A DNA stretch of 64,000 bases from Lepidodermella squamata (taxonomy: Eukaryota; Animalia; Gastrotricha): assembly GCA_047495785.1 (NCBI GenBank), contig JBLDXI010000024.1, forward strand, positions 4,588,001 through 4,652,000, in the 5' to 3' direction. The notes below the pieces were generated by a model. It worked only from the letters and a program-made list of their open reading frames with translations, was not told where the DNA came from and did no database searches. The position numbers and the translations under genes are program-made. This document shows, piece after piece, positions 1-53,000 of the stretch (within the stretch, counting starts at the first letter, position 1; every line of letters begins with the position of its first letter).

Positions 1-1307
1 ATCTTGTACAACTCACAAATCAATTTGTTTTTGACTGTGAAAGTCGTATTTGAGGCCCTGTCAGCCGGTGGGATGAACTACCACACGAGAGTTTACCCGC
101 TACAACTGTACCAATACTCTGGGGCTAGTAGCATTTTGATCTTCATAATTCAAGGCATTTGGATAATACTGCTGATATCTGTGACTATCAAAGCTGTTTA
201 TTCAATGAAAAAACATGGGCCTAAACAGCATTTGAAGGATGGTTGGAATGTATTGGAACTTGTCTCGATCGCCATAGCTTACGGCATTGTCGGTCTCTTC
301 GTTGCGAGGATTTCTAGCATTATCAAAATGATCAATAGAATGCAGACTGATCGATCATCCCACACTAATCTCGACCTACTGGTCAATTGGGACGAAATAA
401 TGGCTAACCTCTACGGCTTGACCTTCTTCATGACCATGATGCTGTTCTTCCGAAATCTGAAATTCAACAAATATTGGTGCATGTTTTTGGCTACTTTATC
501 GAGGGGTAGGAATGACCTGCTTTCATTTATCATTGTGTTCACCATCATCACAATGATGTTCTCTGGCTTGGGCTATTTGACTCTTGGGGCAACTCAAACC
601 GAGTTCAGATCGGTAACAGCTTCAATAATGACCCTACTGCAAAATGTGATCGGTGTAACTGGGACTTTGATCTCCCTCGGCACAAAGTCTCGGTTGATCA
701 TGATCTACTGCATCGCCTACTCTTCGATCGTAATGTTTTTAGCTGTCCAGATTTTCATGACCATCATAACTGTGACGTATGATCATGTTACTGACGACGT
801 TGAGCATAACACTAACTGGGACAAAGAGGTGTCGGAATACATGGTCAAGGAATTTAAGAAGTTGATAACCAGAAAGCAGTCTAAGGAAGATATAGGAATC
901 GACCTGTTAGTTAATGACAGCTCCTTTCCCGAACGTAAGTATAACATTGATGTCTCAAAATTTTTTAACTAACCCTTACATTTGCAGTTGATGAAGCATT
1001 GAATCGGCTTTTGCAACGTGTCGACGCCGTTGCGAAGAATGCTCCACTCATCGAGGAGGATAAACGAGTTGCGTGTAACATCCGCTGGGCCGAGCAGTAT
1101 CTCAGCCTATCGCGCGCAAAATCTGCGAAGCCCGATGTCCGACAACCCTCGGCAACATTCACTATAACGTCAGACGAAGTTGGAGCCCGGCGTCCTAAAA
1201 AGATTCCAAAACGAAGACCTTCAGTTGAACCCATCTTCACGGCAAGACTACCCGGTGGCTTCGCCTATTATGAGTTTCTCAGCCGGTTCAGTGAGCACAA
1301 CGTTTAA
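1..1307 (+). CDS. Polycystin-1-like (PKD1-like) channel subunit, copy A, 3' end only (end of TOP domain, last TM helices, C-tail)
   Basis: LYNSQINLF motif of the polycystin channel domain plus hydrophobic helices. Intron 935-987 (GTAAGT...TTTGCAG) joins the last exon 988-1307. Paralogous to the 3' ends of copies B-D. Confidence 0.9.
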
Positions 1308-15400: not shown

Positions 15401-18400
15401 TCCATTTAGGCTAAGGCCTAGTTCTTTTACAATACTAGCAAATTGTGCTCCGATTGGCCAATGTCTTAACGGAGGGACATGCGTAGCCCCGAATCAATGC
15501 ACTTGCGCAGCTGGTTGGTCTGGAACAAATTGTTCGATAGGTCGGTTTAGAAAGCTAATTTTTTGTCTTCTATTAACTGTGCGACTTCGAATTTTTAGCT
15601 GATTGCTCATCGGTTGCCAACTGCTCTGGGCACGGGTCGTGTGTAAATGTCAGCACATGCTCATGTACCTCAGGCTGGACTGGTCCTGGTTGCTCCATTC
15701 GTGAGTCTTCATCGTGAGCTAACGTTGCGATTGATACAATTTTTGTTCTCAAGCTGATTGCACCTCGCTCGGAGGGTGTCAAAATGGCGGGACGTGCGTT
15801 TCAGCAAACCAATGTTCATGTGCTGGATCCTGGTCGGGAGTCAACTGCGCGAATGGTAAGATACTGTGCTATGAATGGATTCTGTATGATCTTTCGCATT
15901 GATAGCAACTTGCTTTGCCGTTGCAAACTGTTCTGGTCACGGTTCCTGCATTGCATCGAATGTTTGTAGCTGCAATGCTGGCTGGTCTGGTCCGAGTTGT
16001 TCTAGCCCAGATTGCTCTGCTATCGGCGGGTGCCTCAATGGAGCAACTTGCTCCGCTCCGAATACCTGCACTTGTATGGCAGCCTGGACTGGAAACAATT
16101 GTGGAGCTGGTATGCCATATGAAAATTCCCTTTTTACTTCATCAGGATTCTATAGCTTTCGAGGATCCTGGTTGAACTTCTTAGAAACTTAGGTGCTCTA
16201 CGTTTGTATTCAATTTTTAGCAATTACGACAACAACCCCTCCTTCTACAGCAGTTACAACGACCGTTGCAACAGCTGCTTCGTCAACGACTGCCCAAACG
16301 ACTTCGACTGCTTTTACAACGTCAACCCAATCAGCGACTTCAGCAGCATCAACCACTGTCCAATCGACGTCCACAGGAAAATCGTCTTCTTCTTCGATTG
16401 TTCCAACTACTGTCCAATCTACAACTAAGCCGTCAACTACAACCCAGCAGGTTACAACAGTGAAGCCAAGTGAATCCATTGCTGAGCTAGCAGTGGTTTC
16501 TAAACTCCCCGATCAAGCTCTCGTTAGCAATGTATCAGCTTTAAATTCCCAGGTGTTACAAGGTGCGAGTGCGATAACGGAGAATTCCAGCCCGATAAAC
16601 GTTGTGGCTGATTCTGTAAGTCACTGTAAGTTTAACGATCCCCAAGATCAAACCCTTTTTTGGTTCCAGCAAGCATTTCTATCGCTGTCATCTGAGCTGA
16701 TAACCAGATATCAAAAAATGGCTGCGAACCTATCAGTTGAAACTATTCTTACTGTCTCTCAGGGTAATTGGCCATTTCTTTTGATATTCACTTGTAAAAT
16801 TTTCTATATTAGCTTATACTGAATCTGTGAGCTCCGTTCTAACGACGGTCGTTGAAAATAACCTATTACCTGACCCCGAATCTCCAGCAATAATCCTACC
16901 AACAACAGCTGTGAAATGCAAGGCTGATTCTTTCGACACAGAACAACATGTGACTACGCCTCCTAAAGTTGAAATGTCCTCGTCACAAACTGAGAAACTG
17001 CTGAGTGACTTCAGAAATATGTTAGAAGGCATGGCATCTATGGTGAAAGGAGCCTTATCTGCTGGGAAAGACTACAGCTTCAATGGGACCTTCTTCTCAG
17101 TCGTTATCAGCAACGCGTTGGCTGGAAATCTGCCTGGAATGAAGTTGTACACGAATCTCGCAACTGCCCGAATTCCCTTCGTCAGTAGTTTGTCGATTCT
17201 CTTGGACAATCCACCTAAAGGTCTGACAGAGACGAGCAAAATCTCCGTGGTTCTGACGGCCTATGTTTCCAACATCTTCGATCTGACCAAACCATTCAAC
17301 ATGCCAACCATTTCAATGAAAGTCTATTTCGGCTCAACAAGCCTTGTTTTGAACAAAAACTACCCAGTCCAGCTCACTGGTTATCCACTGGTCAGCAAAG
17401 CTAGACAATTATCAACTGATAAAGTCGAGTCGCAATGTGACGTGAGTAAAGTGAAATGCGACGTATCAAGTAACGCGGACAAGCTAGGCTCGTTGGCTAC
17501 ATTTCCTGTGTCAGCAGATGCAGGGGACTTCATTCTGATATTTCCGGCTATCAAATTCGACTACTCTGTTTACATTTCTCTCAATGCGACTCCGTCAGCT
17601 GGATCTTTTACTTGGTCTATCAATGTGACTGACAGTAATGTGGCTGCAAGCGTACACTCAACTCATGGCGCTTTGAGAATGAACTTCGATGTAAAAACAG
17701 AACTCAGAGTCGTAATTCCAAGTGCTGCGCTGTATTCATACATCAAGTTGAAGGCTTCGGCTGGTGCTATCATTCAAAATAACTCATTCACGCTTAGCGC
17801 CTTTGCGAAGAAGAACTTGACCCGATTTTCGCCCTTGGACGATCTACCAGCGTCCGTGTGTGAAATGCAAAAGTGTTACGGTTACCACTTGCGTATTGGA
17901 TTCGCCTCGGAAGATCAAGTCATCGGATCCAGAAGACGGCGTGATGTGAGCTCCAATTCATCTTCAGACGATTTCGAACTGGATTCAGACTCCACCGAAT
18001 CAAGAGTTTCCTTCAAATCTTCTTACTTTGGCGATTTCGGAGCTGATTTGTTGATTTCGCCAAATACGATTCAGTTCTCGGAAATCTTCTCCAACTTCTC
18101 GTCTCTTCTAGCCGATAATGCTTTTGTCTTCGCTTTTATGATCGTTTGCGTTGTTGGCTTCCTAGCCGCTGTTGGGCTAACTGTTATGTCGGATCGGGCA
18201 GATCTAAAAGATTGGGCCTTCATGCCACTATTGAGTAACAAACCGCATCACCAATACACATACTTGATTTCAGTCGACTACTACAAGGTGAAGAGGTACG
18301 AGCTGCAGCCTCAAGTCTTCATTCGACTTATCGGAGAAGGCTGTGAGACGTCTTTTCGGCAGCTACACGATGGCATGCGCAAAAACTTTGCCGGCAAGGT

Positions 18401-21400
18401 TCCAGGCAATTTTGCACTCACAACTGCCTTCCCAATTGAGTACATTGACGCCGTTGAACTCGAAATCGTGAGCAATCCCTGGCCAGCCGGTAGCCGCCCT
18501 TTCCAAATTTACATGGACAAAGTTGTTATCGTGGATGCTGCGACTGGTAAAAAGTACATATTCCCTGTTCGTTCGACTATGGAATCTGGTGATCGTCGAA
18601 AGACTGATCTCGCGACTGAGGATGATATAAAAGGGTTCAGGTACTTGGTTAGCGGTCACTCAAGGACGGGAATAACTGACAACCATCCGTGGTTATCGAT
18701 CATCAAGCGGCCTCTGCCTAGTAACTGGACTCGAGCTGAGAGGCTCTCCTGCGTTGTCTCAGCTTTATTCATGGCTATGCTGGTGAATTGCCTGTTTTAC
18801 GGCCAAGAGGGCTCTTCTCCTAGGATTGGGATTAACATCGGTGGCTTCTTTCGGATTTCATGGTTCACCTTCTACACAAGTCTAGCTAGTTGTATCATCA
18901 TTATTCCTCCAACGACGATTATCGCTTTGATCTTCAAACAAGTAAAACGTCGCTCAGCTGAGAAAAGTAACTGGATAACCATTTTCAATGCCGCAGTGAA
19001 AGATTGCGATGAAGATGCGGATTCAGACGGTAACACGGAGAATTCGAACAAGAAAAAGAAAAAACCATTCCAATTGCCATTCTGGGCTGTGGGAATTGCT
19101 TGGTTTCGTGAGTTACTTATGAGAATTAATACGAGCTTATTTATGTTTTCTTTCTATTTTAGTGGTGGCCGCTTCAGTTGGAACCTCTGCATTCCTCGTT
19201 ATTATGTACAGCCTCCAGTGGGGCCGTGAGAAGTCCTTGCAATGGCTTTCAAGCATGGGAATGCACATAATTCAAGACGTTATTGTCGTTCAATCAATCA
19301 AAGTTGTACTGGTGTCAGTCTTCACGTCATCTCTTCTGAAACTGCCCGACGATGGAATGGCAATGGGCAAGCTCGTCTATTCCCGATGTAAAAACATTTC
19401 CAGTTGTTATCATCAATGCCTGAGTTTCTAATTTTAGATAACAAATCTGAGAAAACGATAGTTTTCAAGCGGATGAGAAATACGATAGCAGGAATAGCCC
19501 ACCACATTGCTTACGTCATAGTTTTCGCATTGGTGATCGCGACTACTCAGAACACGTACCGATTCCAAATTGTGAAGGACATTCGCCCGTTGATTTCATT
19601 CGATGGCGTGGATCAAGTCCTCGAACCGATAACGGACCACGGAAAGATTTTGGACTGGCTTGGGAATAAAGTTCTACCAAACTTCCTGAACGGGAATCAG
19701 CTGAATTACGGCGGAGTCTTCAATCTGAAAAACATTTACGTCGTGCCAAATCATGACGTAGTAATTGTCGGACCGATAAGGATCAGGCAGCAACGAGTTG
19801 CAGCCAGCCCTTGTGCGATTTCAAAAGCGGTGGTCCCATCGTACGTAGCCCGGTATCTGAAACATTTGGCTCCAGCAGACTCTGCTTGTCAGGGTCCGTA
19901 TTCAAACGAAGCAGGGTTAGGATCTTCATCAGAAAATCGAGACTTCCATTACGGCTGGGGCACTCTCAATAACACATTTTTAGACAAATCAAATGTTTCA
20001 TCTGACGACGCTCCTTGGTTGTATCGGGAAGATTCAAACGGGTTTCCTTATTCCGGCTGGTCAGCTATTTACAAAACAGGGGGTTACTACGTGGACTTGC
20101 CATCAAAAATGTGGAAAGCTCAGCTATTAGTTGCAAATCTGAAAGCTGGGAGATGGCTTGATAACTCGACTTCCGTCCTCTTCGTCGATTTCGTCTTGTA
20201 CAACTCACAAATCAATTTGTTTTTGGCTGTGAAAGTCGTATTCGAGGCCCTATCAGCCGGTGGAATGAGCTACCACACAAGGGTTTACCCGTTACAACTT
20301 TATCAATACTCTGGGGCTAGCAGCATCCTGATCTTCATAATTCAAGGCATTTGGATAATACTGCTGATATCCGAAACCATCAAAGCTGCGTATTCGATGA
20401 AGAAAGCTGGGCCGAAGCAGCATTTGAAGGATGGCTGGAACCTATTGGAACTTGTCTCGATTGTCATAGCTTACGGCATTGTCGGTCTATTCGCTGCAAG
20501 GATCTACAACATTATTAAAGTGATCGCAAGAATGCAAACGAATAGATCGTCCTATACTAATCTCGACATGCTGGTTAATTGGGACGAAATAATGGCTAAT
20601 CTCTACGGGTTGACCTTCTTCATGACCATGATGCTGTTCTTCCGAAATCTGAAGTTCAACAAATACTGGTGCATGTTTTTGGCTACTTTATCGAAGGGGA
20701 GAAACGACCTGGTTACTTTCATCGTTGTGTTCACGATCATCACAATGATGTTCTCTGGCCTGGGATATTTGACTCTTGGAGCAACTCAAAGCGAGGTTAG
20801 ATCGATAACAGCTTCAATAATGACTTTGCTTCAAAATGTGATTGGGGTAACTGGAAGCTTAATCTCCCTCGGCGCTCAGTCTCGATTCATCATGATCTAC
20901 TGCATCGCTTACTCATCGATTGTCATGTTTTTGGCTGTTCAGATTTTCATGACCATCATAACAGTGACATATGATCGCATCTCCGATGACGTTGAGAATA
21001 ACACTGATTGGGACAAAGAGGTGTCAGAATACATGTCCGAAGAATGGAGAAAGATGATAACCAGGAAGCAGGCTAAGAAGGTTGAGGAAATTAATCAGCC
21101 GGTCAATGATAGCTCCTTCCCTGAACGTAAGTATGACATCCATTTCTCGAATCCATTTTAATCATCTCGATATTTGCAGTTGAGCAATCCCTGAAACGGT
21201 TGTCGCAGCACGTTGAAGCCGCTTCGAATAACGTTCCTCTCATCGAGGAGGATAAACGAGTTGTATGCAACATTCGTTGGGCTGAGCAGTATCTTAGTCT
21301 AACGCGTGCTAAAACTGCAAATTGCGACGACAGACGAGCTTCGGCAATATCAACTTTGGCTTCAGCTGATGGGGGCGCCAGGCGTCCGAAAAAGCTACCT

Positions 21401-33600: not shown

Positions 33601-36600
33601 CGGAAATTGGCTGCAGTGTAGCACATTGTGCGGGATTTACCCGGATTACAGCGATACAAATGCAACTAGGCTTCCGACTGTTGATTTAAATGCAGGGGTT
33701 TACAAAATTTACTACCAATGCCCGCCGGGATTTTCGGTTATTTCCGGGAGTTTGACCCAGACATGCGCGCCGCCCTATGGAGCTTGGCAGGGAGGTGTTC
33801 CAGTTTGCCAAAATGCAAGTTGCTCACAGCCACAAACATTTGCTGGCACGACCAACAACTTCACGACCCCTGTCTCAATTCCGTTGAATGAACGAATCAT
33901 TGGAGATGCTGTCTGGCGTTACGATTGCGCGGCTGGTTATGTATTCAACGACACAAATTTGCCCAGCGCAACAATTAGGTGCAACATTACGACTAGGGAC
34001 TGGTCTGGCACGGTTGGAACTTGCGTCCCAGATTGTTCAAGCCTTGGGGGTTGCCTGAATGGCGGCAGCTGTTCTCTACCAAATCAATGCACTTGCGCGT
34101 TAGGCTGGATTGGAGCGAACTGTAGTGCTCGTAAGCATGAATAGTTAATCTCGTTTCTTAGAACGAAATATATGTGCAACAGATTCAGGATAGGCAAGAT
34201 GTCTAAGCTCCGCTCATTTTAATATTTATTTAATTATTTACTCGTGTTTCCAGCTGACTGTCGATCTCTTTCGAACTGTACTGGTCACGGTACTTGCATA
34301 TCGTACAACAACTGTTCATGTACGATTGCCTGGCACGATGTCGATTGTTCCAGACGTAAGTTTTAATTGAAATGTATTTTAGCTTGGGCTGAATTCTCCT
34401 GTAATTCAAGCGAACTGTGCTCCAATCGGCCAATGTCTTAACGGTGGGACTTGTGTAGCCCCGAATCAATGCACTTGCGCAGCTGGTTGGTCCGGAACCA
34501 ATTGTTCGATAGGTCGGTTGAGAAATTCATATGCACTTATTTCATGGCTTGTCTTTTCAGCTGATTGCTCATCGGTTGCCAACTGCTCCGGGCACGGTTC
34601 GTGTGTAAATGTCAGCACATGCTCGTGTATATCAGGCTGGACTGGCCCTAGCTGCTCCATTCGTAAGTTCTCATATAACGACAGTCGCAATTTGATAACT
34701 TGTTTGTTCTCAAGCTGATTGTACCTCGCTCGGCGGCTGTCAAAATGGTGGGACTTGCATATCGGCAAACCAATGCTCTTGTGCTGGATCTTGGTCTGGA
34801 GTCAACTGCGCGAATGGTAAGATACTGGGCTATGAGTGAATAACTTTGTACTCTTTCGCATTGACAGCAACTTGCTTCGCCGTTGCAAACTGTTCTGGTC
34901 ACGGTTCCTGCATTGCATCGAATGTTTGTAGCTGCAATGCTGGCTGGTCTGGTCCGAGTTGTTCTAGCCCAGATTGCTCTGCAATTGGTGGATGTCTCAA
35001 TGGAGCAACTTGCTCCTCCCCGAATACCTGTATTTGTATGGCAAGCTGGACTGGAAATAACTGTGGAACGGGTAAGTAAATAACACGGAAGTCATTCTAC
35101 TTTATAAGGGCTGTACAGGGTCCCGGTTGAATTTGTTGGGAAAGTAATGTGTTTTTCTATTTTTAGCAATTACAACAACAACCCCTCCTCCTACTGCAAT
35201 TACAACGACAGCGGCAGCGACAGCTTTGTCAACGGCAGTTCAACCGACTTCTACTACTTCTACTTCTGTTACAACGTCAACCCTAGCAGCTATTTCATCT
35301 TCATCAACAACCACAGGACAATCGTCTTCTTCGGTTATTACTGCTACTGCCATACCCACAACTAAGCCGTCAACTACTACCCAGCTGGTTACAACGGTGA
35401 AGCCTAGTGAATCTATTGCTGAGCTGGCAGTAGTTTCTAAACTACCCGACCAAGCTCTCGTTAGCAACGTATCTGCTATAAATTCTCAGGTGGTTCAAGG
35501 TGCGAGTGCAATAACCGAGAGTTCAAGCCCGATTAACGTTGCAGCTGATTCTGTAAGTGACTGAATATACACGATCGCCTAATTCAAACCTTTTATCGGG
35601 TTCTAGCAAGCCTTTCTTTCCCTTTCATCTGAGCTGATAACCAGATATCAAAGAATGGCTTCGACCTTATCAGTAGAGACTATTCTTACGGTCTCTCAGG
35701 GTGAGTCTTCAGCTTAGTTAAGATTCTTTGCTAAAAGATTCTATTTCAGCTTATACCGAATCTGTAAGCTCGGTTCTAACGACGGTCGTGGAAAATAACC
35801 TACTACCTGAGCCTGAGTCTCCAGCAATCATCCTACCAACAACTGCTGTAAAATGCAAAGCCGACTCTTTCGATACAGAGGAGCATGTTACTACGCCTCC
35901 TAAAGTTGAAATGTCTACGCCACAAACTGAGAAACTGCTGAGTGACTTTAGAAATATGCTAGAAGGCATGGCATCTATGGTGAAAGGAGCCTTATCTGCT
36001 GGGAAAGATTACAGCTTCAACGGGACCTTCTTCTCAGTCGTTATCAGCAATACGTTGGCTGGGAATCTGCCTGGAATGAAGTTGTACACGAATCTTGCAT
36101 CTGCCCAGATTCCTTTCGTCAGCAGTTTGTCGATTCTGCTGGACAGTCCTCCGAAAGGTCTAACGGAGACGAGCAAAATCTCGGTGGTTCTGACTGCTTA
36201 TGTTTCTAACATCTTCGATCTGACCAAACCATTCAACATGCCTACGATTTCAATGAAAGTCTACTTCGGCTCAACAAGCCTTGTATTGAACAAAAAGTAC
36301 CAAGTCAAGCTCGTTGGTTACCCACTGGTCAGCAAAGCTCGACAGCTATCGACTGACAAGGTCGAGTCGCAATGCGATGTCAGCAAGGTGAAATGCGACG
36401 TCTCAAGTAACGCGGATAAATTGGGCTCGTTGGCTATATTTCCTGTGTCAGCCGACGCGGGGGATTTTATTCTGATATTTCCGGCTATTCAATTCGACTA
36501 CTCTGTTTACATTTCTCTTAATGCGACTCCATCAGCTGGATCTTTTACTTGGTCGATCAATGTGACCGGAAATAATGTTGCTGCAAGTGTTCATTCGACT

Positions 36601-39600
36601 CATGGCGCCTTGAGAATGAATTTTGATTCAAAAACTGAGCTCAGAGTTGTAATTCCAAGTGCTGCGCTGAATTCATACATCAAGTTGAAGTCCTCTTCTG
36701 ATGCCATCATTCAGAAGAACTCCTTCACCCTGAGTGCTTTTGCAAAGAAGAACTTGACCAGATATTCGCCTTTGGACGATCTACCAGCATCTGTTTGTGA
36801 AATGCAAAGGTGTTATGGGTACCACATGCGAATTGGTTTCGCCTCGGAAGATCAAATCATCGGATCCAGAAGACGGCGTGATGTGAGCTCGAATTCATCT
36901 TCAGACGATTTCGAACTGGATTCAGACTCCACTGAATCAAGAGTTTCCTTCAAGTCATCTTACTTCGGAGATTTCGGAGCCGATTTGTTGATCTCGCCCA
37001 ACACGATTCAGTTCTCGGAAATCTTCTCCAACTTCTCGTCTCTTCTAGCCGATAATGCTTTTGTCTTCGCTTTTATGATCGTTTGCGTTGTTGGATTCCT
37101 AGCCGCTGTCGGGTTGACCGCTATGTCGGATCGAGCTGATCTCAAGGATTGGGCCTTCATGCCGCTGTTGAGCAACAAACCGCATCAAGAATACACATAC
37201 TTGATTTCAATCGACTACTACAAGGTGAAGAGGTACGAGTTACAACCCCTAGTCTTCATTCGACTAATTGGAGAAGGCTGTGAGACATCATTCCGGCAGC
37301 TACACGATGGCATGCGCAGAAACTTTGCTGGCAAGGTTCCAGGCAATTTTGCAGTCACAACAGCCTTCCCAGTCGAGTATATCGACGCCGTTGAACTCGA
37401 GATAGTTAGCAATCCCTGGCCAGCCGGTAGCCGCCCATTCCAAATTTACATGGACAAAGTTGTCATCGTGGATGCTGCGACTGGGAAAAAGTACATATTC
37501 CCTGTTCGTTCGACTATGGAATCTGGTGATCGTCGAAAGACTGATCTTGCGACTGAGGATGATATAAAAGGGTTCAGGTACTTGGTTAGCGGTCACTCAA
37601 GGACGGGAATAACTGACAACCATCCGTGGTTATCGATCATCAAGCGGCCTCTGCCCAGTAACTGGACTCGAGCTGAGAGGCTCTCCTGCGTTGTCTCAGC
37701 TTTATTCATGGCTATGCTGGTGAATTGCATGTTTTACGGCCAAGAGGGCTCTTCTCCTAGGATTGGGATTAACATCGGTGGCTTCTTTCGGATTTCATGG
37801 TTCACCTTCTACACAAGTCTAGCTAGTTGTATCATTATCATCCCACCAACCACTGTCATCGCTTTGATCTTCAAACGAGTCAAACGTCGCTCAGCCGAGA
37901 AAAGTAACTGGGTAACTATCTTCAATGCTGCAGTGAAAGATGGCGATGATGATGAAGATTTGAACAGTAACTCAGATAATTCGAAAAAGAAGAAGAAAAA
38001 GCCATTCCAACTGCCATTCTGGGCTGTGGGAATTGCGTGGTTTCGTGAGTTCTTCTAAAATGAATCTGTCTATTTTTAGTTCTTCTAACTATTACAGTCG
38101 TAGCCGCGTCAGTTGGTACTTCTGCATTCCTGGTTATCATGTACAGCCTCCAGTGGGGCCGTGAGAAGTCCTTGCAATGGCTTTCAAGCATGGGAATGCA
38201 TATTATTCAAGATGTTATCGTGGTTCAATCAATCAAAGTTTTGCTGGTTTCAGTCTTCACATCGTCTCTTCTGAAACTTCCCGACGATGGCATGGCGATG
38301 GGCAAGCTGGTCTACTCTCGATGTAAAATCATTCCCAATTTTTACCCATAACTTCAGCTTAAATTTTGGTTTTAGATAACAAATCTGAGAAAACGATAGT
38401 TTTTAAACGGATGAGGAATACGATAGCAGGAATAGCCCATCATATTGCTTACGTCATAGTTTTCGCATTGGTGATCGCGACCACTCAAAACACGTACCGA
38501 TTCCAAATTGTGAAAGACATTCGCCCATTGATATCATTCAACGGCGTGAATCAAGTGCTAGCACCTATAACAGACCATGGTAAAATTTTCGACTGGCTTG
38601 GCAACAAAGTTATGCCAAACTTCCTGAACGGAAATCAACTGAATTACGGCGGCGTCTTCAATCTGAAGAACATTTATGTCGTGCCTAACCATGATGTTGT
38701 AATAGTCGGCCCGATAAGGATCAGACAGCAACGAGTTGTGGCTAGCCCTTGTGCAATTTCAAAAGCGACTGTACCGTCCTACGTAGCTCGGTATCTCAAA
38801 CATTTGGCTGCTGCAGACTCTGCTTGTCAGGGTCCGTATTCAAATGAAGCAGGGCTAGGATCTTCATCCGAGAATCGAGACTTCTCTTACGGCTGGGGCG
38901 CTCTCAATGGTACATTTGCTGACAAATCGAATGTGTCATCTGATGTCGCGCCGTGGATGTATCGGGAAGATTCAAACGGGTTTCCTTATTCCGGCTGGTC
39001 AGCTATTTACAAAACAGGGGGTTACTACGTGGACTTGCCATCAAAAATGTGGAAAGCCCAGCTTTTAGTTGCAAATCTGAAAGCTGGGAGATGGCTTGAT
39101 AACTCGACTTCCGTCCTCTTCGTCGATTTCGTCTTGTACAACTCACAAATCAATTTGTTTCTGGCTGTGAAAGTCGTATTCGAGGCTCTATCGGCCGGTG
39201 GGATGAACTACCACACAAGGGTTTACCCGTTACAACTTTATCAATACTCTGGGGCTAGCAGCATCCTGATCTTCATAATTCAAGGCATTTGGATAGTACT
39301 GCTGATATCCGAAACCATCAAAGCTGCGTATTCGATGAAGAAAGCTGGGCCGAAGCAGCATTTGAAGGATGGCTGGAATCTTTTAGAGCTAGTGTCGATA
39401 CTCATCGCCTACTGCATTGTCGGTCTATTCGCTGCAAGAATCTACAACATTATTAAAGTGATCGCCAGAATGCAGACTGATCGATCATCCCACACTAATC
39501 TCGACCTACTGGTCAATTGGGACGAGCTGATGGCTAACCTCTATGGATTGACCTTCTTCATGACCATGTTGTTATTCTTCCGAAATCTGAAGTTCAACAA

Positions 39601-47000: not shown

Positions 47001-50000
47001 GCTGATTGCTCATCCTTTGCTAACTGCTCGAGTCATGGTACTTGCACGAATCCCAACACCTGCTCGTGTACTGCAGGCTGGATCACCCCTAACTGCGGTA
47101 CTCGTAAGTAAACATAGTTTGCAGTTAACAGGATTGTCTGACCTCGACGTTTATATTGTAAATGGCACCATATTTTTGACGTTGCTAAAAGCTGTTTACC
47201 CAGTTTCCAGCATCTTTTTACAGTTCTTGATTCTTGAATGCCCCATTTTTTCTCAGCCGACTGCTCATCGATTGGTGGCTGTTTGAATGGTGGCAGCTGC
47301 GTTTCGCCCAATGTTTGCTCCTGTGCGAGTGGATGGCTGGGCGCCTCCTGCACCATACGTTAGTCTATGGAAATTATTGCTTTCAGTTGATTGCGTATTC
47401 TGAACTGTATAGCTGATTGCTCATCCGTTGCTAACTGTTCAAGCCATGGCACATGCACTAATCCTAACATCTGCTCATGTACTTCTGGCTGGATCACCCC
47501 TAACTGCGGAACTCGTAAGTATCCTCATTTTTAATGAAAAGTCGATATCGCTCATCCATCAATACTCCATAATAGTGGTAGTGTTTAGGATGGTTGACAG
47601 TTTCTGCTATCACTAAAACCATTAATTACTCCTTTTTCAACAGCTGATTGTTCTTCGCTTGGCGGTTGTAAAAACGGTGGATCTTGCACTCAGCCAAACG
47701 TATGCACATGTACTGCGGGATGGATTAGTGCCGACTGCACAACAGGTTTTTGCCCTTTTAATGCCGTTTTCATTTTTTTCGATATCAAAACTTTGTTTTC
47801 AGCAACCTGCTATACATTGGCAAATTGTTCAAGCCACGGCACGTGTATCTCTGCTAATGCTTGCTCTTGCACCGCCGGCTGGACTGGAAGTAACTGCGCT
47901 AATCCAGACTGTTCTTCGCTCGGCGGTTGTAAAAACGGAGGATCTTGTACCCAGCCTAACCAATGCACATGTACTGCGGGATGGAATGGTGTCGATTGCT
48001 CAACAGGTATTTTCCTTATAAACACCTTACCCCAATCGTTACGTGTTTCTTGCTGGTAAAATGCAAAAATCATAAATTTTCCGCAAGCATGTTTCATAAT
48101 CTTATTATAATATACAACTGGATGTTTACCTGCGTGAAACAAATGTGGCAGCAAAGAAATTTCGTTTTCGTTATCAAAATATACAACTCTATTTTAAGCG
48201 AATTGCTCGGGATTGGCAAATTGTTCGAGTCATGGTACCTGTATTTCTCCGAACACTTGCTCCTGCTCGGCCGGATGGAATGGAATTAATTGCGCAAATC
48301 CAGTCTGCACTTCGATCGGTGGTTGTAAAAATGGCGGTTCCTGCACTCAGCCTAGCGTATGCACATGCAATGCAGGATGGGGTGGTGTTGATTGCTCGAC
48401 AGGTTTCTTCCGTATAATCAACAAAATTACTTAGTGTTTCGTCTTCATCTTTAATTTTAGCAACCTGCTATACCCTGGCGAATTGTTCAAGCCATGGCAC
48501 TTGTATTTCTGCGAATACTTGTTCTTGCACCGCCGGCTGGAATGGAATTAATTGCGCTAATCCGGACTGTTCTTCGATCGGTGGTTGTCTCAATGGTGGC
48601 TCATGTACCGCGCCAAATTCCTGTAGTTGTGCATCTAATTGGACTGGCGCAAACTGCGGAACAGGTTAGTTATGAAACAATTTATTTTAGCTTTTTTACT
48701 TTTTACCGATGCTACAGTAAACAAATTGAGGTGAGTGAAAGATAGAAGTATAGATGATAGAAGTTTCGATTAACGTCATTGCTGATCATTTCTTGCACAG
48801 AATTTATGATTTATAAGACAAAGAATCCCTCCCATTTGATTTCAATGTTATTCGTACATAGCTGCTACGGCTACAGCGTTGGTATCAAGCACTACGCCCC
48901 AAACAACCGTAGCAACAACCACAGTACCACTACCAACAAACCTAACAATCGCGAATTTGACGGTCGCTGTGAAGTTGCCCGATCAAGTCCTCATCAGCAA
49001 CGTTAATGCGCTGAATAAACTTGCAGAAGAAGCAACAACAGCGATAACAAACTCCACATCTGAAGCCAGTCTAGCGGATAGTGCGGTTCGTAATATGCTT
49101 CTTGAGCGTCACAACTAATGATGTTGTTGCTATAGCAAACATTTCTAGCTTTATCCGCTGAGATGGTTAGTCGCTATCAAAAGCTGGCGGCTTCTCTGTC
49201 AACTGAAACGATTATTGCTGTTACGCAAAGTAAATTCATCTACCTTTTTCAATTTCTCACATATAATAAAATTTACAGCTTATTCGGAGTCAACGAGCTC
49301 GGTCCTCTCAGAGGTTGTAGATCGTGATTTGATCCCCTCCCCAGAAAACCCAGCAATCATCCTCCCGGCAACATCAATAAAATGCAAGGCAGATACGTTT
49401 GAATCAGAGGCCTTGGTTGTCAAGCCTCCAAAAGTTGAACTTTCCACACCTCAAACCGAGAAGCTGTACTCTGACTTCAGAAGTATGCTAGAAGCCATGG
49501 CATCCATGGTCAAAAATGCACTAGCTGTGGGCAAAGACTACAGCTTCAATGGAACGTTTTTCTCCGTGGTCATCGCCAATATTCAAGCCTCGAAGCTCTC
49601 AGGATTGAAGCTGAACACAAATTTAGCAGCTGCTGAGTTCCCGACAGCTGGGACTTTGTCTGCTTTTCTGGACAACCCGCCATCGACTCTAGCAGATACT
49701 AGCAAGATCTCAGTTGTTCTAACCGGCTACATTTCCAACATATTCGATATGACGAAACCTTTCAACATGCCAACGATTTCGGTAAATGTCTTTTTCGGAG
49801 GATCAAAGCTTGCCCTAAACAAGAAATATCGAGTTCGGTTGTCAGGGTATCCTCTCGTCAACAAAGCAAGACAGCTGTCGACGGATAAAGTTGAGTCTCA
49901 GTGCGATGTTAGCAAGGTGAAATGCGACATCACGAGTAATGCCGACAAACTTGGATCTTTGGCTCGTTTCCCGGTCTCTGTAGACGCTGGCGATTTCGTG

Positions 50001-53000
50001 CTCATCTTTCCAGCGATTAATTACGATTATTCGGTCTTCATAGCTTTGAATTCAACCCCATCTATTGGGTCCTTCACCTGGTCGATCAATGTGACTGGGA
50101 GTAGCGTCTCTGCGAGTGTTCATTCGTTGCACGGAGCTTTAAGAATGACCTTCGATCCGAAAACTGAGCTACGAGTGATAGTGCCCAGTGCTGCGCTGGC
50201 CTCTTTCGTCTACCAGAGGTCTTCCAGCAACGTAGTCAGCACGACATTCATCCTAAACGCTGTTACTAAAAAGAACTTTACCAGATTCTCGCCTTTGGAC
50301 GATCTACCAGCATCAGCTTGTGAAATGCAAAAGTGTTACGGCTACCATTTGCGCATTGGTTTCGCCTCGGAGGATCAAGTCATTGGATCCAGAAGCCGGC
50401 GTGATGTGAGCTCGAATTCTTCCTCAGATGATTTCGAACTGGATGCAGACTCCACTGAATCAAGAGTGTCTTTCAAGTCGTCTTACTTTGGGGATTTCGG
50501 AGCTGATTTGTTGATCTCCCCTAATACGATTCAGTTTTCGGAAATTTTCTCCAACTTTTCGTCTCTCTTGGCTGATAACGCCTTTGTCTTCGCTTTTATG
50601 ATCGTTTGCGTTGTTGGATTCCTAGCAGCTGTTGGGCTTACTGTTATGTCAGATCGGGCTGATCTCAAAGATTGGGCCTTCATGCCGCTATTGAGTAACA
50701 AAACACACCACCAATACACATACTTGATTTCAGTCGACTACTACAAGGTGAAGAGATACGAGCTGCAGCCCCAGGTCTTCATTCGACTTATTGGAGAAGG
50801 CTGTGAGACATCTTTCCGGCAACTACACGATGGGTTAAGGATGAACTTCGCGGGGAAAGTACCAGGAAATTTCGCCCTAATAACGGTCTATCCTATTGAA
50901 TATATTGATGCTATTGAACTGGACATCATTAGCCGCCCTTGGCTAGAGGGCACCAGGCCGTTTCAAATCTACATAGACAAAGTCGTTATTGTTGATGTTG
51001 AAACCGGTAAGAAATACATCTTCCCTGTTCGTTTAAATATGGAATCTGGCGACCGAGTTAAAACCGAATTGGCAACTGAAGACGACATTAAAAGCTTCAG
51101 GTACCTGGTTGGTGGCCACTCGAGAACAGGAATAACTGACAACCATCCTTGGCTTTCGATCATCAAGCGGCCTTTACCAAGTAACTGGACTCGAGCTGAG
51201 AGGCTCTCCTGTGTGGTCTCAGCTCTATTTATGGCTATGTTGGTGAACTGCATGTTCTACGGCCAAGAAGGCTCATCTCCTCGGATCGGGATCAATATCG
51301 GCGGCTTCTTTCGGATTTCTTGGTTTACCTTCTACACAAGTCTGGCCAGTTGTATCATCATTATTCCTCCAACAACGATTATTGCCCTAATATTCAAACG
51401 CGTGAAGAGAAAATCGGCTGAGAAAAGCAATTGGATAACCGTTTTCAACGCAGCGGTTAAAGAGAACGACGATGATGATGGTGAAGAAACAACGCAACAA
51501 AAGAAGGATAAAAAGAAGCCTTTCCAGTTGCCCTTCTGGACAGTGGGAATAGCTTGGTTCTGTAAGTCAAAGAAGCTACTCCTTTCAGTTTAGCTGATTA
51601 TTCCGTTATTAGTGGTCGCTGCTTCAGTCGGAGCCTCAGCTTTCTTAGTGATTATGTACAGTCTTCAATGGGGACGAGAAAAATCCTTGCAATGGCTTTC
51701 CAGTATGGGGATGCACATTATTCAAGATGTTATCGTCGTTCAATCCGTGAAGGTCCTTCTGGTCTCAGTTTTCACCTCGTCCCTTCTAAAGCTACCTGAT
51801 GATGGAGTTTCCTTGGGGAAATTGGTTTACTCTCGATGTAAGTAGATATTCCTTATTCTGATAAAAGTATAATAAGCCTGCTTTTTCAGACAACAAATCC
51901 GAGAAAACAATCGTCTTCAAACGAATGAGAAATACAATCGCTGGCATAGCGCATCACATCGCTTATGTCATCGTTTTCGCTCTGGTAATTGCCACAACAC
52001 AGAATACGTATCGCTACCAGCTTGTCAGGGATATTCGGCCGCTAGTTGCCGTCGACAATGTGTTACAGGTTTTAGACCCGATTCTAGACCACGGCGACAT
52101 TTTCGACTGGCTCGGGAAAAAAATTATACCCAACTTCCTAAATGGAAATCAGTTGAACTACGGCGGAATTTTCAACTTGAAAAACATTTACGTGGTTCCG
52201 AATCATGATGTTGTGATAGTCGGTCCAATCAGGATCAGGCAACAAAGAGTCGCATCGACGCGTTGTCCTGTAGCAAAGTCAATTGTGCCTTCCTTCGTGA
52301 ATCGTTACATTCAAAATCTGGGCGCTTTGAACGTTTCTTGTCAGGATTCGTATTCTAACGAAGCAGGCTGGGGGGCTTCATCAGAAACTCGCGACTACGG
52401 CTTCGCTTGGACCAATCTTTCCACATCCTTTGCCAGTGAATTCAACGTGTCATCTGATGTCGCGCCTTGGCTGTATCGAGAAGATTCAAACGGGTTTCCT
52501 TATTCTGGCTGGGCAGCTATCTACAAAACAGGGGGTTACTACGTGGACTTGCCATCAAAAATGTGGAAAGCTCAGCTATTAGTTGCTAATCTGAAAGCTG
52601 GGAAATGGCTTGATAACTCGACATCGGTGTTTTTCGTCGACTTCAACTTGTATAACTCACAAATCAACCTGTTTCTCACGGTCAAAATCGTTTTTGAGGC
52701 TCTATCAGCCGGTGGGATGAACTATCACGCTAGAATTTATCCGATGCAGCTCTACCAATACTCAGGCGCAAGTAGCATCTTGATCTTCATCATTCAGGGT
52801 CTATGGATAATTCTCCTAATAACTGAGACTGTTAAAGCAGCCTACTTGATGAAAAAAGCTGGAGTGAAACAGCATTTGAAGGATGGCTGGAATCTATTGG
52901 AACTTGTGTCGATTCTTTGTGCCTATGGCATTGTCGGTTTATTCGCTGCAAGAATCTACAACATCATCAAAGTTATCACGAAAATGCAGACGGATCGTTC

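What the first reader, a model, noticed from the sequence alone, without database searches (positions are those of the whole stretch)
17880..18080. GPS autoproteolysis site erased, with a furin-type site beside it in all three complete copies
Seen: just before TM1, SSSDDFELDSDSTESRVSFKSSYFGDFGADLLISPNTIQF aligns by eye to the PKD1-like GPS pattern W..xGC.......T.C.CxHL|TxFG....PNxI. The Trp, cysteines and HL|T are replaced (HLT becomes YFG). Immediately upstream is GSRRRR|DV (17931-17942; same in C), and divergent copy D has GSRSRR|DV, which still fits R-x-R-R. Known: GPS cleavage needs the His and a Ser/Thr nucleophile, and furin cuts after R-x-K/R-R. Inference: self-cleavage has been swapped for convertase-dependent cleavage at nearly the same position, which could make ectodomain release or tethered-agonist exposure regulated.
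Basis: partly seen in the sequence, partly recalled or inferred. Interest (0 to 1): 0.8.

Follow-up and report, generated by a model that had tools for sequence, protein, structure and literature searches.

The report
Dead self-cleaving site, furin-type site instead
Three tandem polycystin-1-like receptor genes keep the fold of the self-cutting (GAIN) domain next to the membrane but have lost every self-cutting residue. They carry instead a conserved furin-type RRRR/RSRR motif in a floppy loop of that domain, so an outside protease probably now does the cutting, although no cleavage has been shown.

Summary
In all three copies (A 17931-17942, C 36868-36879, D 50391-50402) an R-x-R-R motif lies 27 residues before Y-F-G. 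Y-F-G aligns with the H-L|T self-cleavage triplet of polycystin-1. The Trp residues, the cysteines, His and Thr of the GPS motif are all gone.

The loop-to-stalk segment is the most constrained part of the exon (dN/dS 0.018, with many silent changes). Four relatives only 24-43% identical over the pre-TM1 part keep R-x-K/R-R at this spot although the loop around it varies.

Among 131 PKD1-like representatives, none of 83 with H-L-T/S has such a motif in the 100 residues upstream. Of the 48 without it, 19 do, and 5 more carry RRLL (S1P-type). This association did not survive a phylogeny-aware test, because there are too few independent losses.

Cleavage itself is inferred, not shown. The nearest precedent is the SEA domain, which is cut by autoproteolysis in mucin-1 and by furin in Notch2 and GPR126. 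I found no paper describing this for GAIN. Earlier agents of this scan reached the same reading on other paralogs of this genome.

The parts
16974..18059 (+). GAIN-like domain of copy A (residues about 50-411 of the exon translated from 16827); one long helix, then a beta sandwich
17877..17903 (+). Strand Y-G-Y-H-L-R-I-G-F (residues 351-359), the strand that precedes the GPS in relatives; its 'HL' is a look-alike, not the cleavage dipeptide
   Evidence: DSSP strand 351-359. MAFFT aligns it with the 'N-Y-T-x-x-V' strand of H-L-T-bearing relatives.
17922..17963 (+). Flexible loop G-S-R-R-R-R-D-V-S-S-N-S-S-S (residues 366-379) that takes the place of the GPS Cys-Trp..Trp..Gly-Cys hairpin
   Evidence: pLDDT under 50 at 366-379, the only such internal segment; alignment.
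17931..17942 (+). R-R-R-R, furin-type R-x-K/R-R motif of copy A; the predicted cut is after 17942, before Asp-Val
   Evidence: It is the only such motif in ORFs of 60 aa or more across gene A.
36868..36879 (+). R-R-R-R of copy C
50391..50402 (+). R-S-R-R of copy D (one AGA to AGC change; it still fits R-x-R-R)
18006..18020 (+). Strand V-S-F-K-S (residues 394-398), equivalent to the Cys-x-Cys strand before H-L; both cysteines are lost
   Evidence: DSSP; alignment with C-x-C-x-H-L-T relatives.
18024..18032 (+). Y-F-G at the position of H-L|T: no general base and no Ser/Thr nucleophile
   Evidence: phmmer against polycystin-1 6a70_B; MAFFT of 142 relatives.
18033..18119 (+). Last GAIN strand D-F-G-A-D-L-L (403-409) and the stalk up to TM1, equivalent to the polycystin-1 Stachel/stalk; no amino-acid change among the three copies
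   Evidence: Residues 401-431 have dN 0 with dS 1.1-1.75 against copy D.
18120..18215 (+). TM1 helix (residues 432-463)
   Evidence: Helix 432-463 in the model; aligned with TM1 of polycystin-1.
18252..18596 (+). Divergent PLAT-like domain after TM1
   Evidence: Aligned with the PLAT region of polycystin-1 by phmmer. Below Pfam detection, whereas relatives P0005, P0012 and P0016 match PF01477.
19404..21158 (+). ORF holding the polycystin (TOP) domain and the PKD cation-channel domain of copy A
   Evidence: Pfam PF20519 at 1.4e-28 and PF08016 at 2.2e-21.

Best explanation
Each of the three genes encodes a large PKD1-like (polycystin-1 family) receptor-channel. Its parts, in order, are an EGF/fibrinogen/PAN ectodomain, a mucin stalk, a GAIN domain, TM1, a PLAT-like domain and a polycystin channel. 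The following is shown. The GAIN fold is kept, but the GPS is catalytically dead: H-L-T has become Y-F-G, and the Trp residues and cysteines are gone. The hairpin that carried the Trp residues is replaced by a flexible Ser/Asp-rich loop headed by R-x-R-R. This loop and the stalk behind it are the most strongly conserved part of the exon. The following is inferred. A furin-type proprotein convertase cuts after the last Arg as the protein passes through the late secretory pathway. That would make a two-chain receptor whose N-terminal fragment stays bound non-covalently through the last three GAIN strands (383-385, 394-398, 403-409). No cysteine lies after the cut, so no disulfide would bridge the fragments. 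In this reading the two-chain state that other family members reach by self-cleavage depends here on a protease. It could therefore be regulated, for example by convertase supply or by glycosylation or phosphorylation of the Ser-rich flank. Pulling off the ectodomain would then expose the conserved stalk. The same solution appears in many spiralian PKD1-like proteins that lack H-L-T, with furin-type or S1P-type (RRLL) motifs in GAIN loops.
Against: There is no protein-level evidence of cleavage in this organism or any relative. A motif in a loop is necessary but not sufficient. The N-S-S sequon four residues after the cut, and the Ser-rich flank, could be glycosylated and block a convertase. 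The association with GPS loss is not significant in a test of independent pairs on the tree (5-7 transitions, p = 1). Five singleton H-L-T losses and 24 of the 48 GPS-dead members carry neither a furin-type nor an RxLL motif within 100 residues (29 of 48 lack the furin-type motif). The motif lies in different loops in different clades, so it is not one conserved site across the family. Many adhesion GPCRs work with an uncleaved GAIN domain.
Confidence: 0.55

Rival explanations
1. The GAIN domain is simply uncleaved, as in BAI2, BAI3 or CELSR1. The conserved basic-then-acidic loop has another job. It could bind a ligand or glycosaminoglycan, bind calcium through the Asp/Glu/Ser run, or act as an electrostatic latch (a 'flap') over the stalk.
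For: Uncleaved GAIN domains are common and functional (bioRxiv 10.1101/2023.03.12.532270). The whole loop is under purifying selection, including the acidic Ser-rich part and not only the four Arg. That is more constraint than a bare cleavage site needs. 24 of 48 GPS-dead relatives have no convertase-type motif.
Against: In distant relatives the residues around the motif change freely while R-x-K/R-R itself is kept. In sister lineages the loop carries either a furin-type or an S1P-type (RRLL) motif. The shared feature of those two is a convertase recognition site, not charge. Such motifs are absent from all 83 self-cleaving members.
Confidence: 0.3
2. The site is cut, but not by constitutive furin in the Golgi. 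A trypsin-like or other basic-residue protease at the cell surface would cut it, so that cleavage is an activation event rather than a maturation step.
For: A run of four Arg in an exposed loop is a substrate for many serine proteases. The loop is predicted to be flexible.
Against: The P4 Arg is kept in every lineage, in a strict R-x-K/R-R pattern. This is the convertase signature, and trypsin-like enzymes need only P1. The RRLL variants fit S1P, another convertase.
Confidence: 0.1
3. The motif is a chance product of a low-complexity, fast-evolving linker and has no function.
For: It lies in a Ser/Asp/Arg-rich stretch of simple composition. Copy D already has one replacement inside it.
Against: omega is 0.018 with abundant synonymous change. 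The motif is kept in four lineages at 24-43% identity over this part. It is unique in the ectodomain. The one replacement in copy D keeps R-x-R-R.
Confidence: 0.03

Closest known systems
Polycystin-1 (PKD1) and PKD1-like / REJ proteins with a self-cleaving GAIN/GPS
   Same: The layout is the same: GAIN domain, stalk, TM1, PLAT, further TM helices, polycystin (TOP) domain and PKD channel. The stalk aligns residue by residue with that of human polycystin-1 (F-G-A-x-L-x-x-x-P). Pfam Polycystin_dom and PKD_channel match.
   Different: H-L|T is Y-F-G. The GPS Trp residues and cysteines are lost. The Trp hairpin is replaced by a polybasic, acidic loop. Pfam GPS and PLAT models do not match. The ectodomain is built of EGF, fibrinogen-C and PAN modules plus a mucin stalk.
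Cleavage-resistant GAIN domains of adhesion GPCRs (BAI2/ADGRB2, BAI3, CELSR1)
   Different: Those domains keep the GPS cysteines, the Trp residues and most of the motif. The furin site of BAI2 lies between CUB and the first TSP domain, far from the GAIN domain. Here the site is inside the GPS region itself.
SEA domain: autoproteolysis in mucin-1, GPR110 and GPR116 versus furin cleavage in Notch2 (S1) and human GPR126
   Same: One fold is cut in one loop either by itself or by furin, and the two fragments stay associated until force separates them (PMC6954182). This is the same logic as proposed here.
   Different: The fold is different (SEA, not GAIN). In the SEA cases furin cleavage has been demonstrated experimentally; here it has not.
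Spiralian 'x-F-G' PKD1-like subfamily (Lingula PKD1L2-like XP_013397161.1, Schmidtea PKD1L-2, scallop, abalone, mussel and annelid members)
   Same: They share F-K-S-N-F-F-G in place of C-x-C-N-H-L-T. Many carry R-x-K/R-R or RRLL in a GAIN loop. The window genes group with P0005 and P0009 of Lingula (support 90).
   Different: In most of them the Trp..Trp hairpin is kept and the basic motif lies one hairpin loop earlier (-50 to -72). In the window clade, and seemingly in Argonauta P0063, the hairpin itself is replaced and the motif lies at -26 to -31.

Membership tests
PKD1-like (polycystin-1 / REJ) 11-TM receptor-channels | Sequence homology from the stalk through TM1, PLAT and the following TM helices to polycystin-1 | tested here: met
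   phmmer against PDB: 6a70_B polycystin-1, E 3.2e-11, query 400-712. 1088 relatives at E of 0.001 or less, with the named ones annotated PKD1L2, PKD1L3, LOV-1-like or REJ-like.
PKD1-like (polycystin-1 / REJ) 11-TM receptor-channels | C-terminal polycystin (TOP) domain and PKD cation-channel domain | tested here: met
   PF20519 at 1.4e-28 and PF08016 at 2.2e-21 in the ORF 19404-21158.
PKD1-like (polycystin-1 / REJ) 11-TM receptor-channels | PLAT domain in the first intracellular loop | tested here: inconclusive
   Pfam PLAT does not match. The region does align with the PLAT region of polycystin-1, and relatives P0005, P0012 and P0016 match PF01477.
GAIN domain | GAIN fold (helical subdomain A plus beta-sandwich subdomain B, ending in the strand that leads into TM1) | tested here: met
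   [not shown]
GAIN domain | GPS motif (Pfam PF01825): two Trp, four Cys, C-x-C-x-H-L-T/S | tested here: not met
   There is no Pfam GPS match, while controls P0012 and P0016 match at 30.7 and 35.9 bits. The alignment shows all these residues replaced.
GAIN domain | Autoproteolysis chemistry: His at P2 and Ser/Thr/Cys at P1' | tested here: not met
   Y400-F401-G402 lies at the aligned position. No H-x-S/T exists in any register between residue 360 and TM1.
Furin-type proprotein convertase substrates | R-x-K/R-R motif facing the secretory lumen | tested here: met
   RRRR, RRRR and RSRR in copies A, C and D, N-terminal to TM1 and behind secreted-type modules.
Furin-type proprotein convertase substrates | Motif in an accessible, flexible segment | tested here: met
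   pLDDT under 50 at 366-379 between confident strands. This is a prediction; solvent exposure was not computed.
Furin-type proprotein convertase substrates | Actual convertase-dependent cleavage | not testable with these tools
   No protein data were available. The sequencing runs found hold contigs only.

The most novel reading that the evidence does not exclude
In a whole spiralian branch of the polycystin-1 family, GAIN-domain self-cleavage was given up and replaced, more than once and in different GAIN loops, by sites for secretory convertases (furin-type R-x-K/R-R or S1P-type RRLL). That would mean that the two-chain state of these receptors, not autoproteolysis as such, is what selection keeps. 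It would also mean that in these animals the state is set by a regulated protease. This would be the GAIN counterpart of the SEA-domain pair mucin-1 and Notch.
Probability: 0.4. Interest if true: 0.8.

Novelty: new variant of a known kind. Interest (0 to 1): 0.62.

Why it matters
It is still debated whether GAIN-domain receptors (adhesion GPCRs and polycystin-1, the main gene of dominant polycystic kidney disease) need cleavage itself or only the fold. A natural lineage that destroyed the self-cleaving chemistry but keeps a protease site in the same domain would be a natural experiment on that question. The two-chain state could be switched on and off with convertase inhibitors or a four-residue mutation, without touching the stalk. 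It would also extend the 'self-cut or furin-cut' principle from SEA to GAIN, the only other domain known to stay assembled after cleavage (PMC6954182). The family-wide pattern (0 of 83 against 19 of 48) gives many further proteins on which to test it.

Tried and rejected
1. The word-index protein search with the 800-aa exon found nothing, so the full HMMER search was needed.
2. Pfam on the exon gave no family at E of 0.1 or less.
3. I considered that C-Y-G-Y-H-L-R (17874-17894) might be the real GPS remnant, with the loop inserted after H-L. I rejected this because MAFFT and the model place that strand on the strand before the GPS in relatives. In addition, the residue after H-L is Arg, and the phmmer register on polycystin-1 puts H-L-T on Y-F-G.
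4. I considered that the basic loop is homologous to the RRLL loop of Lingula P0005, with a deletion after it. The alignment and strand order place the two in neighbouring, not identical, loops. This is not fully settled.
5. The phylogeny-aware association test (independent pairs) was underpowered and gave p = 1. The Fisher value must therefore not be read as independent evidence.
6. RNA evidence: no run on record as RNA holds the stretch. One run guessed to be RNA shows a spliced 55-nt GT..AG intron in a 90-99% similar sequence. This is weak support for expression only.
7. Literature searches gave nothing for GAIN + furin + polycystin or for PKD1L + GPS + furin. The furin site of BAI2 is outside the GAIN domain. 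A 2026 review of adhesion GPCRs never uses the word 'furin' in the part of its text that is held (the first 300,000 of 412,533 characters). Its only 'proprotein convertase' is the title of a cited BAI1 paper, and nothing there concerns cleavage inside a GAIN domain.
All searches and folds used single exons by reference, so GAIN subdomain A may be incomplete in the model.

Full report
WHAT IS THERE

The window holds three complete tandem copies, all on the + strand, of a large eukaryotic gene. It also holds the tail of a fourth copy: 4-969 is 84% identical to the channel exon of copy A.

The big exon of each copy is 16827-19226 in A, 35728-38055 in C and 49215-51590 in D. Copies C and D are 93% and 80% identical in protein to copy A.

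Upstream ORFs of copy A carry EGF, three to four fibrinogen-C domains, PAN/EGF-like modules and a Thr/Ser-rich mucin stalk. The next large ORF (19404-21158) matches Pfam Polycystin_dom (1.4e-28) and PKD_channel (2.2e-21).

phmmer against all solved structures finds only polycystin-1 (6a70_B, E 3.2e-11). That alignment runs from residue 400 of the exon through TM1, the PLAT region and the following helices. The genes are therefore PKD1-like (polycystin-1/REJ family) receptor-channels.

THE OBSERVATION

The quoted peptide is at the stated place. RRRR is 17931-17942 in A and 36868-36879 in C. RSRR is 50391-50402 in D.

The polycystin-1 alignment puts F-G-A-D-L-L-I-S-P on F-G-A-S-L-F-V-P-P. This places Y400-F401-G402 (18024-18032) on H-L-T. 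An alignment of 142 relatives gives the same register: C-x-C-N-H-L-T-S-F-G in most, against F-K-S-S-Y-F-G-D-F-G here.

No His followed by x-Ser/Thr exists in any register between residue 360 and TM1. By the established mechanism, which needs a His base and a Ser/Thr/Cys nucleophile at P1', self-cleavage is therefore excluded.

The 'H-L' in C-Y-G-Y-H-L-R (17874-17894) is a look-alike. That stretch is the strand preceding the GPS, and Arg follows it.

IS IT A GAIN DOMAIN?

I folded residues 1-470 of exon A, using an alignment of 130 homologous segments (A2). The model has pLDDT 84.2 and pTM 0.77.

Pfam's GPS model does not match the window protein. It does match the H-L-T controls P0012 and P0016.

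WHERE THE MOTIF LIES

The model's strands near the membrane are these:
- 351-359
- 383-385
- 394-398 (V-S-F-K-S, equivalent to the C-x-C strand)
- 403-409 (D-F-G-A-D-L-L, the last GAIN strand, or Stachel)
- TM1 helix, 432-463

Residues 366-379 (G-S-R-R-R-R-D-V-S-S-N-S-S-S) are the only internal stretch with pLDDT under 50.

Against H-L-T-bearing relatives, this loop takes the place of the Cys-x-x-Trp...Trp...Gly-Cys hairpin of the GPS. A cut after R372 would leave three GAIN strands on the membrane-bound fragment. All cysteines would be on the other side, so the fragments could be held only non-covalently, as after GPS cleavage.

IS THE MOTIF CONSTRAINED?

1. It is the only R-x-[KR]-R in any ORF of 60 aa or more over the whole span of gene A. 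In copies C and D the only other in-frame motifs lie in a cytoplasmic loop.
2. Codon comparison shows many silent differences and almost no replacements around it. For residues 361-440 between A and D there are 23 synonymous and 2 non-synonymous differences.
3. By Nei-Gojobori, residues 366-431 have omega 0.018 at dS about 0.7. The upstream GAIN part has 0.07-0.09 and the TM part 0.05-0.06. The sameness is therefore due to selection, not gene conversion. The single replacement in copy D (AGA to AGC) keeps R-x-R-R.
4. A full HMMER search of 1.84 billion representatives found four relatives that cover the pre-TM1 region: P0001, P0002, P0003 and P0008 (28-45% identity in that search; 24-43% over the aligned pre-TM1 part). 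They are unnamed contigs of ENA metagenomes.
5. All four lack H-L-T, and all have a furin-type motif at the same spot: S-R-R-K-R-R-A, N-R-K-R-R-Q, R-R-K-K-R-N and K-R-R-R-R-A. The rest of the loop differs in sequence and length.

THE FAMILY PATTERN

I classified 131 representatives that have at least 100 residues upstream of the H-L-T position.

| Class | Members | R-x-[KR]-R in the 100 residues upstream | RxLL in the same stretch |
|---|---|---|---|
| H-L-T/S | 83 | 0 | 1 (RQLL) |
| x-F-G (cysteines lost) | 31 | 12 | 5 (all RRLL, at -53/-54) |
| Other (cysteines kept, H-L-T replaced) | 17 | 7 | 0 |

- The background rate is 0.05-0.075 motifs per 100 residues. Fisher's test gives 3e-10.
- RRLL fits the S1P/SKI-1 convertase consensus (my own knowledge of that consensus).
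- Named members are all spiralians: the brachiopod Lingula, many molluscs, annelids and flatworms, including Schmidtea PKD1L-2.
- A model of the Lingula relative P0005 (pLDDT 89.6) puts its RRLL (314-317) in loop 303-323, which holds that model's least confident stretch (pLDDT block means 70 and 55).

CAUTION ON THAT PATTERN

I built a tree from the TM1-PLAT-TM columns, leaving the GPS columns out. On it the H-L-T state changes only 7 times.

The motif-bearing proteins fall into four GPS-dead clades, and five singleton losses have no motif. The independent-pairs test is underpowered (p = 1).

The pattern is real as a description: the motif occurs in at least two separately derived GPS-dead lineages and never in self-cleaving members. 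It is not statistically independent evidence.

The motifs also lie in different loops. They sit at -26 to -31 in the window clade and in Argonauta P0063, at -50 to -72 in most others, and further up in a few.

MECHANISM

The following is shown:
- a GAIN fold
- a dead GPS
- a flexible, highly constrained loop headed by a convertase-type motif
- an invariant stalk behind it

The following is inferred. A furin-type convertase cuts the site in the late secretory pathway. This yields a non-covalent two-chain receptor, and removal of its ectodomain, for instance by force on the lectin/mucin part, would expose the conserved stalk. In polycystin-1 the stalk acts as a tethered agonist (my own knowledge of the polycystin-1 literature).

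The Ser/Asp/Glu-rich flank, with an N-S-S sequon and S-x-E motifs, is conserved more strongly than a bare cleavage site needs. It may regulate cleavage or have a function of its own.

I put the cleavage reading at about 0.55. An uncleaved GAIN domain whose loop has another role stands at about 0.3.

COMPARISON WITH WHAT IS KNOWN

- Cleavage-resistant GAIN domains are known (BAI2, BAI3, CELSR1), but they keep the GPS scaffold.
- The furin site of BAI2 lies between the CUB and TSP1 domains. That of GPR126 lies in its SEA domain.
- The closest precedent in logic is the SEA domain. It is cut in one loop by autoproteolysis in mucin-1 and by furin in Notch2 and human GPR126. [quoted passage not shown]
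- My searches found no paper describing a convertase site inside a GAIN/GPS region or in PKD1-like proteins. The library covers open-access papers only.

EARLIER NOTES OF THIS SCAN

Earlier follow-up agents reached the same reading on other paralogs of this genome (s1-374079; s1-407626, which has RLKR). I did not re-test those loci.

This report adds the following:
- the codon-level selection test
- the family-wide survey and its phylogenetic caveat
- the RRLL variants
- the structural placement of the loop on the lost Trp hairpin

LIMITS

- There are no protein data.
- The model covers one exon only.
- Expression evidence is weak. One run of uncertain type shows a spliced 55-nt GT..AG intron (19108-19162) in 90-99% similar contigs, and no joint or indel other than assembly-type strand switches within 17880-18080.

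Noticed in passing
window 4-969 (+): Tail of a fourth tandem paralog: its channel-domain ORF is 84% identical to that of copy A. The array therefore continues upstream of the window.
   Followed up: partly
window 19108-19162 (+): A 55-nt GT..AG intron is skipped in a contig of run X1, which is guessed to be RNA and is 90-99% alike. This suggests very short introns and that a close relative of this gene is transcribed and spliced.
   Followed up: partly
P0005 residues 314-317; also P0013, P0017, P0031 (Lingula) and P0048 (Babylonia): RRLL, the S1P/SKI-1-type convertase motif, lies at -53/-54 from the dead GPS in five x-F-G relatives. In the P0005 model it sits in the least confident loop. Only 1 of 83 H-L-T members has any RxLL there.
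   Followed up: partly
window 17943-18005 (+): The 21 residues after the basic motif (rich in Ser, Asp and Glu, with an N-S-S sequon and S-x-E motifs) are almost invariant among copies despite silent changes. They may be glycosylated or phosphorylated and so gate cleavage, or they may bind calcium.
   Followed up: no
window 17859-17876 (+) and 17436-17459 (+): Two invariant cysteine pairs (C345/C350 and C204/C211) remain in the GAIN-like domain, all N-terminal to the basic motif. They may replace the lost GPS disulfides.
   Followed up: no
window 18252-18596 (+): The PLAT-like domain is too divergent for Pfam in the window protein and in P0001. More distant relatives still match PF01477.
   Followed up: partly
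[not shown]
   Followed up: no
P0063 (Argonauta hians), about 26 residues before I-F-G: A cephalopod member of another x-F-G clade also seems to have replaced the Trp hairpin by a loop with R-K-K-R. This may be an independent repeat of the window's arrangement.
   Followed up: no
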